60,754 nt of DNA from Salisapilia sapeloensis CBS 127946 (taxonomy: Eukaryota > Protista > Oomycota). Position numbers and translations under genes: made by a program. Below the pieces are notes generated by a model. The model ran no database searches. It was given only the letters and a program-made list of their open reading frames with translations, and was not told the DNA's origin. Where the stretch lies: contig JAADVB010000098.1 in assembly GCA_023334545.1 (NCBI GenBank), positions 1-60,754 of the forward strand. The letters run 5' to 3'. Shown here piece by piece: positions 1 through 40,372 of the stretch; position 1 is the stretch's first letter; the number at the start of each line of letters is the position of its first letter.

Positions 1-613
1 CCAGCACTCCATCCTTCATCGACACTTTGGCCTTCCATACATGGATCCAAGTGATGAGCAATAACACTTCAGTTTTAAATGGGGCCGTACCCATGGAGCC
101 CGGCGATTACCTGGCTTCGGCTTGGAGATCGTTTCAAAGGTTCAAGTTTACTTAATGGGTAATGTGGAGGTATGTATTATTATTTATTAATTTTTTTGTA
201 CATACTAAATGCAGTGGACGATGTAGTTGCCAAGCAGAGTGGCTCCAGTTGTGATGTCACTTTACTGGAACGTACTAAATATCTCGTAATATTATACGAC
301 TAGTAGCTATATTTATGCCAGCACAGTGTTCTTGCCTACTTTTACTTTGCTGGGGCAGTGCATGCACGCGCTTTCGATTGTATCCCAAGCTAACCCCAAT
401 TCGCCTTTCCAAGCTTCGAATAATCACTTCTGGCACACGAACGACTCAGTCCTATACCCTGCTTCTAACTTCAAGTTCGACCATCAACTAAGCATACATA
501 ATCCAAGTCAAATAAGGCGGAATGCGCAAACACGCCATCCAACGTATCTCCTCGCGGCATCAGATCATTTTACCAATTGCTACGTCGATCGCACCACCGG
601 AAGTTGAGCAGCG

Positions 614-26973: not shown

Positions 26974-27873
26974 GCTGGTTCTCGGTACCTGATACGAGGA
27001 TTTTATTTCGATAGGCAGGCCTCTCGGTCTATTGACCGTCGCACGAGCCTTGCAGATGTGAACGGAATACAAATATTTAAGTTTCAAAGCAGCATTTAGG
27101 AGTTTATTGTCATTAGATCGGATGGTGCGCGGTGGAGGGAGCATGCGATGGAAGTTGTATCTATCATTGGGCGTTTTGGATTCGACCTGAGTCGAAGCTT
27201 TACAGCGTGTACCTTCAACCCCCACTTGCGTTTGCAGATGCGTCATTCGGCGATGCGTTCTGGTGGCTCCGGAGTAAAATGGGATTCTCGAAGGTATCTT
27301 ATCCAGTCAGTGGTCAATTCAGCTCCGGGGGACAGTCAAGAGATGAAGTAGATTTCCTGCGTCTTCTCAAGGTACAGTCCAAGGATGGGGCGCTTGCATG
27401 CCACATCTACTCGACACGCACTATCTGTCGCTTGGAGGAGCGAGATGATCTAAATAGAGCGTGCTATGTGTGCATTAGTGGGAGAGATAATCTACATGGT
27501 GATTTATGAGGAACATTCACATATAATTACTGTATGGAATTAAGCAAGGTTTCTATGTTCCCAAAATCTTTTGCTGCTCTCTTTGATCTGACCAACCTCT
27601 ACTCGTTAGTAAACTTGAGCAACTGCTTGCCTAGTACATATACACTCACCTCCAGTCACACTCACTCGTCGGTTCAAAAGTATAATTAGAATATTTGAAA
27701 TGAGATCTACTTGCAGGTGCCAATCGAGTACTACTCTTCATGTCCGTGTACAACTTCAACATGCTACTATACTAAACTTCATATAGAATAGTGACGTGCA
27801 AATGGAACGGCATTTTTACGTCTGAGTCGACATTTCTCAGCATCTGCGCGACGAATCACACGGACGTGGCTCG

Positions 27874-28371
27874 ATGCGATTTGCTCCATTTTCACTCCTT
27901 CTTGTGCTCTTCGCATCCGTTGCTGTAATTACTCTAACGGCTTACACATTTTCCGATTGCTGCTTGGCTGACTCTCACTCCCAATCGTCCTCTATCACCA
28001 TGGTGGACAAGCTGACACCAGAACTGCGCGAAGAAATTGAGTCTCATCCAGATCATCCGAAGGATGTGATCATCTCGTTGGACCCAGATCGCATGCCCAC
28101 CGACGATCCAAACTGCACGGATGAAGCCCTTAGTAGTAACAACAACTACGTCGCATCACGCCGCCAGAAAGCAGCGTGCTTACAGACAGAAGTGAAGAAT
28201 TATTTGGATGCAAACACGGACATGTATGATGAAGTCAAGTACTTTTGGATCAAGACGGATGTGAGCGTGAAAGGTGCGATGCCCAAGCTACTTTCCAGCT
28301 TATCGGAACTCGATTCGGTTACTGAAGTCCGAGAAGATAAGCCAGTTGCGACGATCAATGGTTCTCAGTAG
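27874..28371 (+). CDS. Stand-alone subtilisin-propeptide-like (I9-type) protein with a predicted signal peptide
   Basis: Hydrophobic N-terminus, then DVIISL...LQTEVKNYLD...YFWIKTDVSVKG...LSSLSELDSVTEVRED. This aligns by eye with the prodomain of the subtilisin at 38885. No catalytic domain follows. Confidence 0.72.
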   Translation: MRFAPFSLLLVLFASVAVITLTAYTFSDCCLADSHSQSSSITMVDKLTPELREEIESHPDHPKDVIISLDPDRMPTDDPNCTDEALSSNNNYVASRRQKAACLQTEVKNYLDANTDMYDEVKYFWIKTDVSVKGAMPKLLSSLSELDSVTEVREDKPVATINGSQ

Positions 28372-28434
28372 TGATATAACATGAATTTTGATCCCTTTCG
28401 AAAATTGCTTCGTCAAGAGTATGTGTATTTCGTT

Positions 28435-31400
28435 TTATAGCGATATCGTGCTTTCATGATCCTCTTCGTCGTCATCGTCCGCTTCGTTCCACCCTGTGTA
28501 GTGACCTGTCTGCTCTTCGGACCATTCGGTCGCTGCTCCATACTGCCCCATTTGTGCATGCCATGCTCGTATCGATTCTTCATCCCACCCCTGATGGTCG
28601 TATGTGGTATATTCGCTGTGTGGAATGGAAGCATAGGATGGATCCTGTGTATACTCATCTGGATGCCCTTCATTCCATCCATGCTCATACGTTTGATATG
28701 CAGGATCAATACTTGGGTCGTAGTTAGCATCCACCCACGCATTCCAATTCTGCTCTTCCGAGGTTTGCCATTCTACTCCTGGGGACAGCATGCTTTGGTC
28801 TTGTACATATTCGGCCGTGGATAGCATGTCTATTGTTGCTACTCTGTCATCGTATTCAGCAAATTGATCGAAAGGTAGCTGAGGATGGCTTTCTTCAAAT
28901 GAAGGTGACACATTTTCTGAAACTTGTTCTACTTGATCGAGTATTGCTGCCATGGTGTCTGCCACATATGCTTCTTCTTCCAAAGTATCCTCTAGCATGT
29001 CATTGTCAACGGCAGGCGTTAATGGTCCTAGTATTGCATCATCATCTTCTTTTACGACTTGTTCAGACTCCTCCAGCAACACAGGCACTGTATCTACTTC
29101 GTCATGCTCATTCTGTGGTATCGGCTCTTGAACTTGTTCCTCTTCGTCTAATGTATCTCTAGATATCTCTGAAGATGAAGCTTTATCAGGAAGAATTAAA
29201 TCCTCGCAGGTGTTTAATTGAGGATCAGTTTCCAATGATGAATCTTCGACGGGTATACGAGGACCCTCAGAGCTATTGGTTTCCATGTCACTCTCCAATG
29301 GTGAAACTTCAATAGGTGAGATGGGAGTTTCGAAGGTATCTGATTGACTATTCGCTTCCAATGACAAAGCTTCAGCAGGTAAAATGGGACTCTCGGGTAT
29401 ACTCGTTTGGAGATCAGTCTCTAATGTTGCATCTTTGACAGGGAAGATGAGAGTACCGAACGTATTCGGCTGAGGATTAGTTTCCAATGTTAAAGCTTCA
29501 CTTGGTGGGGTGAAATCCTCATAGGCACTCAATTGTGAACCTGTTTCCACGAGTAATGGTTCTACTGGTAATACCGGAGCCTCACAAGTACTTGATCGAG
29601 AATCAGTTTCCATTTTAAACTCAGCAGTCTGAACAGCACGTGAATAGCTTTCAGTCTTACGCTGTTCCTTTTTTGGTTCATCCTTTATCACAGTAGCCGA
29701 CGTTGCAAAGAGCGTTGCTGAATCTGTTTCAAGGAGCAGAATAGCAAGCACTTGACAAAAGTATTGAAGGAGCTCCAACGTCAGTTGGTCATGAGCTTCT
29801 TGAGCTGCTTCCTTTTCCCTATCCTTCTTCTCCGAATCTGGCTTTGATCCAGTGCGTGCCATCTCTATCATACCGAGAGGAGTATTCTTAACAGGTGATG
29901 CAATTCTTACCAAGTACAGCCCAGCATCGCCAGTGCTTAAGTCTTCTGCATCATTATATGTACCAGCTTCCAATACATTTCTGAGTATCTCATACCCGGA
30001 TGCAACCAGCTCTGATGTATTATTAACTGCTTTAGCGCACAAGCATGACGTCGTGGTGACGTATCGCCGGCGTATAACTTCTTCTCCATCATCTTTTTGT
30101 TCCTTTCGTATATACCATGTTTGGTTTTGGTCACTTGTAAAGACAAAGATGCGAGCTGCTCGTGCTTGTAGTATATCTAATAATCTCTCTTCGGCTTCAG
30201 CAACAACAGCTAGTTGGGATCCTGGAGCTTGTGACGATGATTGAGAGAGCGTGCCAAAGAGATGAAGGATTTGAGAGGCCTTCTTCTGCGACCGCTCTGT
30301 ACTCGATGTAACATGCGTCTGCAGTAGAATGGAGGCGGCATAGTGGCTAAGTAACGTTCCAAGTATCTCGTCTGTTGACGAGAATGGCCTTCCATTGATA
30401 GTATTCCAGCATTGCAGCACAGCAAAGGCTTTATCTGAGGATGCTGTTGCCATCGGTATGCACAAGACTTGGCGAGACGGCATACTCGTGATAGAGTCCG
30501 AGGCACTGTAGAATCGAGCGTCTTCATAAGCCCTTTTAACGTTGCAAATCGAGTTTTGTCTCGCAGCAAACCCTGCAAATCCACGATCCAGTGGAAACTG
30601 CCATTGAACTGGTCCTCGCTCGCAGGCATGAGATACTAATAGCTTGGATGATTCATCAACAACAAAGACAGCAGCATGGTCACACTTTAAGAGTGAGCAT
30701 GCTTGCTGCAGTAATCTAGACGTATCGTAAGGACATATTGGACAATAAATGAAAATAAAGATAGTACGAATGGAGGACAGTCGGAGCATGAAGCGAACGA
30801 ACAATGGTTTGGCATGCCTGGATCCATTTCTTGATGGAGACAGACAAGTTGATCGCCAACGTGATATTAAAGTCCGGATCGAGTTTGTCAAGCACTTTGA
30901 GGATGCTTGGGTCAATGTACTGGACGTCATCACTATGGACTTGATGAGATGAAGGCTCGCGGGTGGTAGAAAGCGATGCTGACGGACAGCGACTTGGACT
31001 ACAGTTGGAACTCCTTGAAGTGTTAAGAGGAGAATATGTTCCCTTTGATTTAGGAGGAGGTTGTAGTTTTGTTTTTGAATCCTCGTGGTTTAGTAGAGCC
31101 GGTGGACTATCACTAGAGTTGTGTTCGGATACAAAGTCGGATGGATCATCGACTTCATTCATCTGGCGCACAGCTTCCATCTCAGCTTTAATTTCCCTTA
31201 GCTGGATAGCCTGTCGATTGGTTACTTCTTTGTCCTGCACATGCCTAGCTTCCAGGACCTACAGTCAAGTAGATTATCTACTTTGAGTTATCAAGTCACA
31301 ACAAATCCAAGTCGCAATGCATACCTTTAGTTTTCGAATGAGTTCTTGGTTTTCTTTCGCCAGTCGATTAATGGTCTTTTGGGTAGAAGAAATGTGGTCA

Positions 31401-32158
31401 CTTGGGCGATTTGCAGGTGATTTCGACGACATCTTTTCAAGTGCAGAATATGCAGACGCGTACTTGCCTGTCAGCTTGTCAATCGCCTGCTTGTGTTGTC
31501 GATTCTCTGCCTGTGTATCTTGTACTTTAAGAAGAGAGCTACGCAGTTGGCTCTTCAGGTCTTTCGCATAATCTTTCAGATGCAGAACTTGTGCCTCCAA
31601 ATTTCTCTTGTCTTTGACCAAGGTTGACATTTGCCGCTCCATCAACTGTACTTGATGTCGTAAAGAGTGTGCATCGCCTTCATCGTCATTGCTATTGCTC
31701 ATGAATGCACACGGAGAAGGCGAAGTATGCGTTGCTAAAGGCTCTAACCGAGGTCTATGCAACGAAGGACTGAATGCAGCGGACGAATTTGATGATGCGG
31801 AGGCTAGAAGCATACTACGATTTTGATATGACGAATAGACTTGGGCTGACGGAGGATTCGACCATGGTAACTCTGGCGATGATCCACATCGATTCAAAGA
31901 TGAAATAAACGGTGGAGATACCGTGGTTTCCTGCTTATAAACGTTCAAGTCCGCAGGTACTGGAAGAGGTGTCGGCTCTACTACTTCATTATTCGACGCT
32001 AGAGCAGTTCCAGGTGAAGGTTCCGGTCGCTTTGGCTTCTTTCTCGAGCTACTATGACTTAATGAGCCAGTTGGTTGCTGGACAATGAAGAAAGTAGAGG
32101 CGGATGGAGGAGGTAATCGCTGGTTCTTCAAGCGTGATGAAGTAGATCGATTCTCCAT
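28435..32158 (-). CDS. Coiled-coil plus GAF-domain protein with an acidic repetitive C-terminus, 1201 aa, three exons (32158-31325, 31258-30768, 30715-28435)
   Basis: Introns GTATGC...TGTAG (66 nt) and GTACTA...TCTAG (52 nt) join three ORFs in frame (3606 nt). GAF signature LLKCDHAAVFVVD...FPLDRGFAGFAA...NVKRAYEDARF...VLCIPM...VLQCWNTINGRPFSSTDE, followed by a second degenerate GAF. Confidence 0.8.
29188..29565 (-). repeat. Six degenerate 63-nt (21-aa) coding tandem repeats
   Basis: A TCCAATG-like word recurs at 29231, 29294, 29357, 29420, 29483 and 29546 (exact 63-nt period). Peptide unit approximates xExxxLETxxQxxTxExxIxP. Confidence 0.75.
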
Positions 32159-38884: not shown

Positions 38885-40372
38885 ATGAAGTGGTTGCCAG
38901 TCATTTTCGTTGTCCTCGCCTTTATTTCTATATTCCCTCGCCTCGAAGCATATGGACGTGAAGAGCCTCAGCGACAACGCACTCCAGTTACTGCTCGAAG
39001 TGCTAGAGACTTTATGAAAGCGAATAGAAAAATGGATGTTATTATTCGCGTTTATGACGATGCTTCTCGTCCACTTCGAGCGATTGGAGAGCAAAAGTTT
39101 GAATCCCGATCCAGTCACCTTAACGGTGCAAGAAGAATTCTTCGAAAGCACGCTCGAAGTTCCCAGGAGAGGATTATTGAATTGCTAGATAGACTAGGTT
39201 ACAAAACAAGTAACCCCAAGGGAGCTAAACGAGCAACACAGTTCTCTATATCCAATTCTATCCACGTAGATAGCATCACGGAAAAAGACCTTGGCGAGTT
39301 GGAATCTCACCCTGATGTGCGTAAAGTTGAGCAAGAAATGAGGCTTGATATTGTGGTACCAACGATTGAAACTCACTCTTCAGCTAAAGTTGTCAACACA
39401 GATCAAGAAAACTGGGGGATAAAGAAAATGGGCGTTGATGAGGTGTGGGGAATGTACGGAAATACTGGTGATGGTATCACCGTTGGTGTCATCGACTCCG
39501 GCGTCGATGGTAAGCATGAAGCCTTGAGTAGTAGCTTTGCAGGAGAATATGGGTGGCACGACCCGCAGGGTAAATTAGAACCGTACGATGAATCCGGGCA
39601 TGGTACTCATGTGACTGGAATAATCACTGGTGAAAACGGTATTGGTGTCGCTCCTGGTGCAAAGTGGATGGCATGCAAAGGTTGTAGAAGCAGATCGGAA
39701 GGATGCTTACTCTCAGACCTTTTAGAATGTTTCGAGTGGATGTCTTGTCCAACGAAGGCAGACGGAACGGATGAAGATTGCTCGAAAGCCCCGCATGTAA
39801 TCAACAATAGCTGGGGTGGCGGACGTAACTTGCAAGACTTTGACGATGTCATAGAAGTATGGCATGCACTAGGAATCATCCCGATCTTTGCAGCAGGTAA
39901 CACTGGTCCAAGATGCAATACGGTCACTTCGCCAGGCGATAAGTACAATGTCATTACTGTCGGCGCAACGGATTCGAACGATCAGCTTGCTCGATTCAGT
40001 TCCAAAGGCACGGGGGTTGATGGTATCGTCAAGCCCGACATCGTTGCTCCTGGTAGATCGATACTATCTAGCTGCCTATCTCCTAGACGACACGACTACT
40101 ACTGCCTCAAGTCAGGGACAAGTATGGCCACCCCTCAAGTAAGCGGTCTCGTCGCTTTATACTTGCAAGATCGCAAAGACGCTTCATACGATGAAGTTCG
40201 AGACGCATTGCTTCTTGCGACTGTCAAATCGATTTCGAATCCCACAAGACATACTTGTGGTGCACCGAAAACCCCGGATGACATCTTTCCAAACCAACAA
40301 GTCGGCAACGGACGTATCGATGCCGTCGCTTTAATCAATCATGCTCGAGCGAAGAACGGTGCCAACCACTAG
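38885..40372 (+). CDS. Secreted subtilisin-like serine protease (S8A) with prodomain
   Basis: Signal peptide, I9-like propeptide, catalytic triad VIDSGVD / HGTHVTG / GTSMATP, and the oxyanion Asn in AAGN. Confidence 0.96.
   Translation: MKWLPVIFVVLAFISIFPRLEAYGREEPQRQRTPVTARSARDFMKANRKMDVIIRVYDDASRPLRAIGEQKFESRSSHLNGARRILRKHARSSQERIIELLDRLGYKTSNPKGAKRATQFSISNSIHVDSITEKDLGELESHPDVRKVEQEMRLDIVVPTIETHSSAKVVNTDQENWGIKKMGVDEVWGMYGNTGDGITVGVIDSGVDGKHEALSSSFAGEYGWHDPQGKLEPYDESGHGTHVTGIITGENGIGVAPGAKWMACKGCRSRSEGCLLSDLLECFEWMSCPTKADGTDEDCSKAPHVINNSWGGGRNLQDFDDVIEVWHALGIIPIFAAGNTGPRCNTVTSPGDKYNVITVGATDSNDQLARFSSKGTGVDGIVKPDIVAPGRSILSSCLSPRRHDYYCLKSGTSMATPQVSGLVALYLQDRKDASYDEVRDALLLATVKSISNPTRHTCGAPKTPDDIFPNQQVGNGRIDAVALINHARAKNGANH

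What the first reader, a model, noticed from the sequence alone, without database searches (positions are those of the whole stretch)
27874..28371. Stand-alone subtilisin propeptide: a candidate protease-inhibitor or chaperone partner for the nearby subtilisin
Seen: the mature part aligns with the prodomain of the 38885 subtilisin. DVIISL matches DVIIRV; QKAACLQTEVKNYLD matches KHARSSQERIIELLD; YFWIKTDVSVKGAMPKLLSSLSELDSVTEVRED matches QFSISNSIHVDSITEKDLGELESHPDVRKVEQE. The ORF stops cleanly where a catalytic domain would begin, and the next gene starts 63 nt later, so nothing was left behind. Known: I9 propeptides fold and inhibit subtilisins, and free I9 proteins exist in fungi (POIA1, yeast IB2) and plants (SPI-1); the well-known oomycete subtilisin inhibitors are Kazal type. 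Inference: an I9-type inhibitor that controls self proteases or targets host subtilisins, forming a protease/inhibitor pair about 10.5 kb apart.
Basis: partly seen in the sequence, partly recalled or inferred. Interest (0 to 1): 0.75.

Follow-up and report, generated by a model that had tools for sequence, protein, structure and literature searches.

The report
Free-standing subtilisin prodomain gene in an oomycete
This small, expressed gene encodes a secreted copy of just the prodomain of a nearby subtilisin protease. It belongs to a conserved, unannotated oomycete family that most likely acts as a built-in inhibitor of that protease, a kind of regulator already known from fungi, plants and malaria parasites.

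Summary
The 165-aa ORF at 27874-28371 (+) is real, intronless and transcribed. Compared directly, it is no more similar to the prodomain of the 38885 subtilisin than chance would give (Smith-Waterman z 0.5).

- **Family:** about 20 small oomycete "hypothetical proteins" with no Pfam hit (Pythium, Globisporangium, Nothophytophthora).
- **Homology to the prodomain:** profile against profile of the syntenic subtilisins gives hhalign 97%, E 1e-10. An orthologous pair gives BLASTP E 4e-11.
- **Fold:** the AlphaFold2 model built on the family alignment (pLDDT 81) is a beta-alpha-beta-beta-alpha-beta fold. Its only PDB match at Z 8 or more, out of 48,161 chains, is the N-propeptide of Tk-SP (Z 9.3). 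Tk-SP is also the closest solved relative of the window's subtilisin.
- **End of the chain:** it stops 3-4 residues past the position of the prodomain's last residue.
- **Linkage:** the gene lies 0.3-10 kb from an S8 gene in five lineages and is missing from that position in one.
- **Selection and origin:** dN/dS is 0.12-0.34. The small family and the prodomains form two clean clans (100/100), so there was one ancient partial duplication.

The most likely role is an endogenous I9-type inhibitor, as for Plasmodium SUB1-ProM, yeast IB2 and plant SPI-1. Inhibition itself is untested. This is a new member of a known kind.

The parts
27818..28412 (+). Observed transcribed span of the small gene (union of the contigs). 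It is unspliced. The 5' end reaches at least 56 nt upstream of ATG1 and the 3' end at least 41 nt past the stop.
   Evidence: Contigs lie at X1 27818-28316, X2 27837-28365, X3 27873-28412 and X4 27941-28395, with 0-1 mismatches and no joints inside. Nothing is laid on 27664-27807. A 67-nt GT-AG joint in the upstream gene (X3) shows these runs hold spliced RNA.
27874..28371 (+). ORF of 165 aa plus stop: a stand-alone subtilisin-prodomain-like protein.
27874..27954 (+). N-terminal hydrophobic signal peptide, or possibly a signal anchor (residues 1 to about 27). ATG1 is the first AUG in the observed transcript.
   Evidence: The model has a helix at 6-25. Homologues carry MR-plus-hydrophobic N-termini. 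There is no ATG in 27818-27873. No signal-peptide predictor was available.
28000..28002 (+). Met43: a methionine kept just after the signal peptide in nearly all family members, and a possible alternative start.
   Evidence: Not resolved, because contig ends are not transcript starts.
28018..28044 (+). Extra N-terminal helix (residues 49-57) that precedes the core. The Tk-SP N-propeptide has it too.
   Evidence: model 44..157 aligned on 3afg_B 16..109.
28060..28335 (+). Core beta-alpha-beta-beta-alpha-beta prodomain fold (residues 63-154): strand 63-69, helix 92-113, strands 120-124 and 129-135, helix 137-143, strand 149-154.
   Evidence: mean pLDDT 81; ten-residue blocks over the core 71-97, lowest at 71-100. 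(3afg_B Z 9.3, rmsd 1.8 A, 82 aa, 22% identity)..
28114..28116 (+). Cys81: the first of two family-invariant cysteines, absent from the subtilisin prodomains. A disulfide with Cys102 is inferred.
   Evidence: The disulfide itself was not verified because model coordinates could not be read.
28177..28179 (+). Cys102: the second family-invariant cysteine, in helix alpha1.
28336..28368 (+). C-terminal tail (residues 155-165). Asp155 sits at the nearly invariant acidic position after the last strand. The tail reaches the position of the prodomain's P1 residue (about 161-162) and ends 3-4 residues later.
   Evidence: Tk-SP propeptide is Ala1-Ala113 (PMC3599501). The helix-capping role of the Glu/Asp pair in prodomains is described in PMC6993865.
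38885..40372 (+). Linked secreted subtilisin (495 aa, Peptidase_S8) with its catalytic residues conserved. It is the parental type of the small gene and its presumed target.
   Evidence: PF00082, E 2.5e-53. (closest PDB 3afg Tk-SP, E 5.9e-39). (D204, H239 and S413 invariant among orthologues).
39026..39361 (+). The subtilisin's own prodomain (residues 48-159), the segment homologous to ORF residues 61-163.

Best explanation
**Shown.** The ORF is a transcribed, intronless gene for a small protein that enters the secretory pathway. After the signal peptide, its whole folded part is a paralogue of the N-terminal prodomain of the Tk-SP-like subtilisin 10.5 kb downstream. It belongs to an oomycete-wide family that arose once, by an ancient partial duplication of that subtilisin lineage. 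The family has since stayed under purifying selection and usually near the S8 gene.

**Inferred.** It works as prodomains and known stand-alone I9 proteins do. Its beta-sheet face packs on the two surface helices of the mature protease. The conserved acidic residue after the last strand caps a helix. The C-terminal tail lies in the substrate cleft. The result is a tight-binding inhibitor acting in trans, which keeps the organism's own secreted subtilisin(s) silent in the secretory pathway or outside the cell.

The two family-specific cysteines probably form a disulfide. That would make the free domain stable by itself.
For: **Family.** phmmer against 1.8 billion representatives found three small homologues. 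A profile search found 18 proteins of 143-233 aa, from named oomycetes and unnamed assemblies. None has a functional name or a Pfam hit.

**Homology to the prodomain.**
- hhalign: probability 97%, E 1e-10.
- BLASTP on the orthologous pair: E 4e-11.
- tblastn of family members onto S8 prodomains in several loci: E 1e-4 to 3e-12.

**Fold.**
- AlphaFold2 on the 20-sequence alignment gives pLDDT 81 and beta-alpha-beta-beta-alpha-beta topology.
- In the exhaustive VIA search of 48,161 chains the only match at Z 8 or more is the Tk-SP N-propeptide: Z 9.3, rmsd 1.8 A, 82 aa, 22% identity.
- PCSK9 prodomain scores 7.2, POIA1 6.4 and subtilisin E/BPN' prosegments 5.9-6.3.
- Nine of the ten nearest ESM Atlas clusters are Peptidase_S8 proteins, both for this model and for the P. 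oligandrum homologue.
- The window's subtilisin is itself closest to Tk-SP.

**Conserved columns.** Those shared by the family and the S8 prodomains sit in helix alpha1, the W..N turn between strands 2 and 3, helix alpha2, and the V.....E.I stretch of the last strand and tail.

**Linkage to S8 genes.** P. oligandrum has three tandem S8 genes ending 313 bp upstream. S8 lies 6.5-7 kb away in Nothophytophthora, P. insidiosum and the three Logan contigs, and 10.5 kb away here.

**Selection.** dN/dS is 0.12 and 0.34, against 0.095 and 0.13 for the S8 prodomain part in the same pairs.

**Single origin.** The small family and the prodomains are split with 100/100 support.

**Expression.** Gene-bounded contigs in four runs.

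**Precedents.** SUB1-ProM lies in a syntenic locus next to Plasmodium subtilisin genes and is a potent SUB1 inhibitor. POIA1, yeast peptidase B inhibitor, SPI-1 and TgMIC5 are further examples (PMC6993865; PMC11371169).
Against: - No binding or inhibition was measured, and no complex could be modelled.
- The Pfam Inhibitor_I9 model does not match any family member. A family profile finds no PDB propeptide by sequence.
- The ferredoxin-like fold is common: NikR, ACT and HMA domains score Z 6-7.
- The window's member is the most divergent. It has an 11-residue deletion in helix alpha1. It has Arg rather than an acid at the first of the two helix-capping positions. Its tail may fall a few residues short of the true cleavage site of its subtilisin.
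- Globisporangium polare keeps the small gene but has no S8 gene within 10 kb, so linkage is not obligatory.
- The linkage sits inside a larger conserved block (kinase, nadB-like gene), so it may reflect only origin plus synteny.
- The RNA evidence is contigs only, from one study, and the run kind is guessed. Depth cannot rank genes.
Confidence: 0.6

Rival explanations
1. Host-directed effector. The free prodomain is secreted to inhibit host subtilases, for example plant P69/SBT-type defence proteases, as the Kazal inhibitors EPI1 and EPI10 of Phytophthora do.
For: - It has a signal peptide-like N-terminus.
- Its contigs carry high word depth in the RNA-like runs (with the tool's caveat on depth).
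- Oomycetes are known to secrete inhibitors of host subtilases (PMC5700374).
- Pathogen-derived subtilase inhibitors are mentioned in PMC11371169.
Against: - There is one copy per locus, in conserved synteny, with dN/dS 0.12-0.34 and no expansion. That is unlike arms-race effectors.
- The family occurs in oomycetes with very different life styles: a mycoparasite (P. oligandrum), a mammalian pathogen (P. insidiosum) and plant-associated Globisporangium. The life styles are stated from general knowledge.
- Its closest sequence relative is the organism's own subtilisin prodomain.
Confidence: 0.12
2. Neo-functionalised prodomain fold with a role unrelated to proteases, as with plant DAG/MORF RNA-editing factors, which share the I9-like fold.
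For: - MORF9 appears among the structural matches at Z 5.5-5.8, along with many other ferredoxin-like proteins.
- DAG-like proteins share similarity with inhibitor I9 (PMC5515838, abstract).
- G. polare keeps the gene without a linked S8 gene.
- The family has its own features that the prodomains lack: two cysteines, and a lysine-rich tail ending in a TFGF-like motif in many members.
Against: The columns conserved in both the family and the S8 prodomains are the strand 2-3 turn, the last strand and the acidic residue after it. In solved complexes these contact the protease (PMC6993865). The secretory targeting matches that of the subtilisin.
Confidence: 0.15
3. Trans-acting folding chaperone: the free prodomain helps fold a subtilase catalytic domain.
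For: Prodomains act as intramolecular chaperones (PMC6993865). The fold and homology are as described above.
Against: The linked subtilisin and all its orthologues keep a full prodomain of their own. The characterised stand-alone propeptide-like proteins named in PMC6993865 are described there as protease inhibitors or regulators, acting independently of any chaperone activity. [quoted passage not shown]
Confidence: 0.08
4. Non-functional remnant: a truncated subtilisin gene copy drifting neutrally.
For: It arose by partial duplication of a subtilisin gene. The window's copy is a long branch with a deletion.
Against: - The ORF is kept open across genera at 26-31% identity to the window, with invariant residues.
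- dN/dS is below 1.
- It is transcribed.
- It has gained conserved cysteines.
Confidence: 0.03

Closest known systems
[quoted passage not shown] 2020, PMC6993865)
   Same: Both are small stand-alone prodomain-like proteins with a secretory signal. Both are encoded in a conserved syntenic locus next to subtilisin genes, and both are structurally closest to the prodomain of a subtilisin of the same organism. SUB1-ProM is a potent, selective inhibitor of that subtilisin.
   Different: This is a different lineage (stramenopile rather than apicomplexan) and a different subtilisin type (Tk-SP-like). Sequence homology to the parental prodomain is statistically demonstrable here (E 1e-10 to 4e-11), and the family carries two conserved cysteines. 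Inhibition is untested here.
MEROPS family I9 free inhibitors: Pleurotus ostreatus POIA1, yeast peptidase B inhibitor (IB2/PBI2), Arabidopsis SPI-1
   Same: The fold is the same. The whole of POIA1 (residues 1-76) superposes on model residues 61-162 (Z 6.4, rmsd 2.4 A, 17% identity). Both consist of a prodomain only, with a C-terminal tail ending at the P1-equivalent position.
   Different: The Pfam Inhibitor_I9 model does not match. This protein has an extra N-terminal helix and a much longer helix alpha1, as in the Tk-SP N-propeptide. It is secreted, whereas IB2 is cytosolic (general knowledge). According to PMC6993865 those three lack significant sequence similarity to prodomains, while this family has it.
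N-propeptide of Tk-SP, Thermococcus kodakarensis (PDB 3afg)
   Same: It is the best structural match: Z 9.3, rmsd 1.8 A over 82 residues, 22% identity, with the N-terminal helix included. Tk-SP is also the closest solved relative of the window's subtilisin.
   Different: It is covalently part of a protease precursor and is removed by autoprocessing after Ala113 (PMC3599501). Here the domain is a separate gene product.
Oomycete Kazal-type (EPI1/EPI10) and cathepsin-propeptide-type inhibitors
   Same: They are secreted oomycete protease inhibitors. The cathepsin-propeptide type is likewise a free prodomain (PMC5700374).
   Different: The folds and families are unrelated (I1, I29). Kazal inhibitors are expanded in copy number and target host proteases. 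The surveyed section of that paper names only these two inhibitor types as the most abundant and does not mention an I9-type inhibitor.

Membership tests
Pfam PF05922 Inhibitor_I9 / MEROPS I9 | Match to the Pfam Inhibitor_I9 profile at or above the gathering score | tested here: not met
   No I9 hit at E up to 10 for the ORF, for its mature part, or at E up to 1 for any of the 20 family members. The subtilisin's own prodomain is not detected either.
Pfam PF05922 Inhibitor_I9 / MEROPS I9 | Beta-alpha-beta-beta-alpha-beta open-sandwich fold that superposes on subtilase prodomains | tested here: met
   Model pLDDT 81 with that topology. 3afg_B scores Z 9.3 and is the only match at Z 8 or more among 48,161 chains. 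PCSK9, POIA1, subtilisin E/BPN', CspB and EpiP prodomains score Z 5.7-7.2. Nine of ten Atlas neighbours are S8 proteins.
Pfam PF05922 Inhibitor_I9 / MEROPS I9 | Sequence homology to a bona fide subtilase propeptide | tested here: met
   hhalign probability 97%, E 1e-10. BLASTP E 4e-11. tblastn E down to 3e-12. The direct window-to-window pair alone is not significant.
Pfam PF05922 Inhibitor_I9 / MEROPS I9 | C-terminal tail that reaches the P1 position of the prodomain and so can occupy the S4-S1 subsites | tested here: inconclusive
   Model 62..162 aligns to BPN' prosegment 7..77, and 44..157 to Tk-SP 16..109 (P1 is Ala113). The P1 equivalent is therefore about residue 161-162 of 165. However, the sequence alignment to the window's own subtilisin leaves its true cleavage site uncertain by about 5-9 residues.
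Pfam PF05922 Inhibitor_I9 / MEROPS I9 | Tight-binding inhibition of a subtilase | not testable with these tools
   Needs recombinant protein and enzyme kinetics. No multimer modelling was available.
Stand-alone propeptide-like proteins (SUB1-ProM type) | A separate gene with no catalytic domain attached | tested here: met
   The ORF ends at 28371. No splice joints appear in the contigs across it. A convergent gene ends at 28435. There is no S8-like sequence in the window other than 38885-40372.
Stand-alone propeptide-like proteins (SUB1-ProM type) | Conserved genomic linkage to subtilisin gene(s) | tested here: met
   S8 lies within 0.3-10.5 kb in the window, L001-L003, L004 (three tandem S8 genes), L005/L007 and L006. 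The exception is L008, G. polare.
Peptidase S8 (the neighbouring gene 38885-40372) | Subtilase domain with an Asp-His-Ser triad | tested here: met
   PF00082, E 2.5e-53. D204, H239 and S413 are invariant among orthologues. Closest PDB entry is Tk-SP, E 5.9e-39.

The most novel reading that the evidence does not exclude
This may be the first free I9-type regulator whose origin can be read directly from sequence. It would be a partial tandem duplication of its own target's gene (divergent origin, not convergent), then stabilised by a new disulfide and co-inherited with the subtilisin across a wide range of oomycetes (Pythium, Globisporangium, Nothophytophthora and this divergent lineage). It would define a previously unrecognised class of oomycete protease regulators, missed by Pfam-based secretome surveys. 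Such regulators might gate secreted proteolysis during growth or infection.
Probability: 0.35. Interest if true: 0.6.

Novelty: new member of a known kind. Interest (0 to 1): 0.5.

Why it matters
Oomycete secretome surveys list Kazal and cathepsin-propeptide inhibitors (PMC5700374). This family is invisible to Pfam, and every named member is annotated as hypothetical or uncharacterized.

It gives a clean evolutionary example. PMC6993865 raises convergent evolution as a possible origin for stand-alone propeptide-like inhibitors. Here a free prodomain is demonstrably a paralogue of the neighbouring protease's prodomain, so its origin by partial gene duplication can be argued from sequence.

If it does inhibit the linked subtilisin, it is a handle on how oomycetes control a conserved secreted protease. 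It would also be a natural, specific inhibitor scaffold for that enzyme.

Tried and rejected
- **Pfam scans** of the ORF, its mature part, the subtilisin N-terminus and all 20 family members found no I9 or other credible family.
- **Word-based homologue search with the single ORF** found nothing.
- **Single-sequence AlphaFold2 model** had pLDDT 52, and its Foldseek hits were meaningless.
- **Family profile against PDB sequences** gave only a spurious MscM hit at E 0.36.
- **The top phmmer hit P0001**, a 901-aa bacterial repeat protein, matches only a short DDPNCT-like stretch and was discarded.
- **Bacterial promoter and terminator scan** is not applicable to a eukaryote and found nothing.
- **The BLASTP segment VDKLTPELREEIESHPD against VDSITEKDLGELESHPD** (E 0.015) is in a different register from the true alignment. 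I treat it as chance or local helix mimicry.
- **An exon of a larger gene** was considered and rejected. No splice joints appear in the contigs, and the convergent gene ends 63 nt downstream.
- **Not possible:** the disulfide could not be checked because model coordinates cannot be read.

Full report
**1. What is at the coordinates**

An ATG-initiated ORF of 165 aa runs from 27874 to 28371 on the + strand. The 63-nt spacing is right, but what begins at 28435 is the stop-codon end of a long convergent ORF on the minus strand (28435..30933 and beyond).

The gene 10.5 kb downstream (38885-40372, +) is a 495-aa Peptidase_S8 (PF00082, E 2.5e-53). It has a signal-peptide-like N-terminus and an invariant Asp204/His239/Ser413 triad among its orthologues. 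Its closest solved relative is the archaeal subtilase Tk-SP, PDB 3afg (E 5.9e-39).

**2.

From the window alone, it is not.
Its best segment (E 0.015) is in a different register.
- A Smith-Waterman shuffle test gives z 0.5, and 550 of 2000 shuffles reach the observed score.
- Pfam sees no Inhibitor_I9 domain in the ORF or in the subtilisin's own N-terminus.

With homologues, it is.
- An exhaustive phmmer search found three small homologues (E 1e-5 to 3e-4), plus one spurious bacterial repeat protein.
- A profile of those four sequences then found 18 proteins of 143-233 aa at E 1e-26 to 1e-69.
- The named members come from Pythium oligandrum, P. insidiosum, Globisporangium polare, G. ultimum and Nothophytophthora. 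Each is called "hypothetical" or "uncharacterized", and none has a Pfam domain.
- On the contigs of these homologues an orthologue of the window's subtilisin lies nearby.
- The pair from one contig aligns by BLASTP at E 4e-11, 31% identity over 103 residues, covering prodomain residues 44-146.
- Profile against profile (family A2 against three subtilisins A3) gives hhalign probability 97% and E 1e-10.
- tblastn confirms cross-hits between small proteins and S8 prodomains in every locus that has both (E 1e-4 to 3e-12).

**3. Fold**

The single-sequence model was useless (pLDDT 52). With the 20-sequence alignment the model reaches mean pLDDT 81 (ten-residue block means over the core 71-97, lowest at residues 71-100).

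The topology is: helix 49-57, strand 63-69, helix 92-113, strands 120-124 and 129-135, helix 137-143, strand 149-154.

- Foldseek's top hit is ProN-Tk-SP (probability 0.99).
- In an exhaustive alignment to 48,161 PDB representatives, the only match at Z 8 or more is the Tk-SP N-propeptide. It scores Z 9.3, rmsd 1.8 A, 82 residues, 22% identity, with model 44-157 on chain 16-109.
- Next come the PCSK9 prodomain (7.2), generic ferredoxin-like domains (NikR, ACT; 6.5-7.0), the free inhibitor POIA1 (6.4, its whole chain on model 61-162), and subtilisin E/BPN' prosegments (5.9-6.3 at 17-18% identity).
- Nine of the ten nearest ESM Atlas clusters are Peptidase_S8 proteins, for this model and independently for the Atlas's own model of the P. 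oligandrum homologue.

So the best structural match is the prodomain of the very subtilase type encoded next door.

**4. Where the chain stops**

Model residues 62..162 align to residues 7..77 of the 77-residue BPN' prosegment. Model 157 aligns to Tk-SP residue 109, and the Tk-SP propeptide ends at Ala113 (PMC3599501). The P1-equivalent position is therefore about residue 161-162, and the protein ends at 165.

The true autoprocessing site of the window's subtilisin is not known. It could lie 5-9 residues further on.

**5. Expression and gene model**

Four runs of one study (organism coded, contigs only, kind guessed as RNA) hold the stretch. Their contigs are bounded by genes:
- 27818-28316, 27837-28365, 27873-28412 and 27941-28395 over the ORF;
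- nothing on 27664-27807;
- separate contigs for the convergent gene starting at 28422-28443.

One contig of the upstream gene carries a 67-nt skip with CT..AC ends, which is a GT-AG intron on the minus strand. That shows spliced RNA is present.

There are no joints inside the ORF, so the stop is not spliced around. The transcript reaches at least 56 nt upstream of ATG1, and 27818-27873 holds no ATG. ATG1, and with it the hydrophobic N-terminus, is therefore the first AUG.

Word depth of the ORF contigs (455-2950) far exceeds that of the convergent gene (10-18). The tool warns that contig depth should not be used to rank genes.

**6. Evolution**

*Selection.* Nei-Gojobori dN/dS for the two close pairs is 0.12 (dS 0.41) and 0.34 (dS 0.14). 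The prodomain part of the linked subtilisin gives 0.095 and 0.13 in the same pairs. The gene is not drifting neutrally.

*Origin.* A maximum-likelihood tree of 18 small proteins and 9 S8 prodomains splits the two groups with 100/100 support. That means one duplication before these lineages diverged. Both window proteins are long branches.

*Linkage.*
- P. oligandrum has three tandem S8 genes ending 313 bp upstream of the small gene.
- Nothophytophthora (two haplotype-like contigs), P. insidiosum and three Logan contigs have the order small gene, unknown gene, nadB-like gene, S8 within 6.5-7.5 kb.
- The window has the same order over 10.5 kb.
- G. polare keeps the small gene but has no S8 sequence within 10 kb.

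The block also holds unrelated genes, so linkage may be only a trace of origin plus synteny.

**7. Mechanism**

Columns conserved in both the small family and the S8 prodomains are:
- an Arg and Q..V..LL in helix alpha1;
- W..N at the turn between strands 2 and 3;
- A..L...L in helix alpha2;
- V.....E.I in the last strand and tail.

In solved prodomain-subtilisin complexes, the sheet face, a plug at the hairpin turn, a Glu/Asp helix-capping pair after the last strand, and the C-terminal tail make the contacts (PMC6993865). The window protein has Asp155 at the conserved acidic position.

Both proteins carry secretory N-termini. The subtilisin keeps its own prodomain, so it does not need a chaperone in trans.

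The family has two invariant cysteines (Cys81 and Cys102 here) that the prodomains lack. I infer a stabilising disulfide, which I could not verify.

The best-supported reading is a trans-acting, prodomain-type inhibitor of the organism's own subtilisin(s). I give this 0.6. That the gene is a stand-alone prodomain paralogue is close to certain. The rivals are a host-directed inhibitor (0.12), a neo-functionalised fold (0.15), a trans chaperone (0.08) and a dead remnant (0.03).

**8. Comparison with what is known**

Stand-alone propeptide-like inhibitors are an established kind: POIA1, the yeast peptidase B inhibitor, Arabidopsis SPI-1, Toxoplasma MIC5 and Plasmodium SUB1-ProM (PMC6993865; PMC11371169). 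SUB1-ProM also lies in a syntenic locus next to subtilisin genes.

A survey of oomycete effectors lists Kazal and cathepsin-propeptide inhibitors only (PMC5700374). My searches of the paper library found no description of this family.

It fails the Pfam I9 profile test. It meets the fold, homology, stand-alone and linkage tests.

My verdict is a new member of a known kind. Its useful extra feature is that divergent origin from the target's own gene is demonstrable.

**9. Peculiarities of the window's copy**

It is the most divergent member (26-31% identity). It has an 11-residue deletion in helix alpha1 relative to both the family and all the prodomains. It also lacks the lysine-rich C-terminal extension ending in a TFGF-like motif that many homologues carry.

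Noticed in passing
window 28000-28002 (Met43); alignment A2: Nearly every family member has a methionine right after the signal peptide, and three database entries start there. tblastn shows in-frame extensions of the ORF upstream of the annotated start in two of them: L008, where the extension aligns with the signal-peptide N-terminus of the window protein, and L006, where it is only 21 nt. This could be an alternative start giving a non-secreted form, or just a conserved first residue of the mature protein. The contigs cannot settle it.
   Followed up: partly
homologues P0003, P0004, P0009-P0015, P0017, P0020 (C-termini); absent in window 28336-28368: Many family members carry a lysine-rich C-terminal extension ending in a (T/S)FG(F/L) motif. 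MAFFT places it against the TQWG(V) motif at the start of the mature subtilisin. The original duplication may have included the cleavage site and the first residues of the catalytic domain. The window's copy lacks this tail.
   Followed up: partly
window 28372-28434: After the double stop (TAG TGA) the same frame reads on as YNMNFDPF... for 20 codons. This faintly recalls the M-x-F-G-F tail of homologues and could be a relic of a tail cut off by a stop. It is not statistically supported.
   Followed up: no
window 28177-28215 (helix alpha1): The window's protein has an 11-residue deletion (about three helical turns) in helix alpha1, relative to all other family members and to all S8 prodomains, including the window's own.
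   Followed up: partly
L004:4568-10540 (Pythium oligandrum): Three tandem Peptidase_S8 genes (459, 458 and 450 aa) are followed 313 bp later by the small prodomain-only gene. This arrangement looks like the tandem-duplication state from which the family arose.
   Followed up: partly
L008 (Globisporangium polare): The small gene is present, but the syntenic slot between the nadB-like gene and the Lip_C gene has no S8 gene. tblastn finds no S8 catalytic sequence in the 20-kb locus.
   Followed up: partly
window 27463-27531, minus strand: A 67-nt GT-AG intron of the upstream minus-strand gene is seen as a joint in one contig (run X3). That gene and the small gene share a divergent intergenic region of about 150-230 bp with no contig cover (27664-27807).
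   Followed up: no
window 28395-28443: Contigs of the small gene and of the convergent GAF-protein gene end within about 10 nt of each other (28412 against 28422), so the two 3' UTRs nearly abut.
   Followed up: no
window 27967-28053 vs 39233-39316: BLASTP's best local match between the two window proteins (E 0.015, 14 of 29 identical; the core is VDKLTPELREEIESHPD against VDSITEKDLGELESHPD) pairs the small protein's N-terminal helix with the alpha2 to last-strand region of the subtilisin prodomain. This is a different register from the true homology. It may be chance or an internal echo.
   Followed up: no
window 28435-32158 vs L001-L008 downstream neighbours: In the other oomycetes the gene just downstream of the small gene is a + strand ORF of 382-503 aa with no Pfam hit. 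In the window it is a minus-strand GAF-type protein. I did not check whether these are related, or whether an inversion occurred.
   Followed up: no
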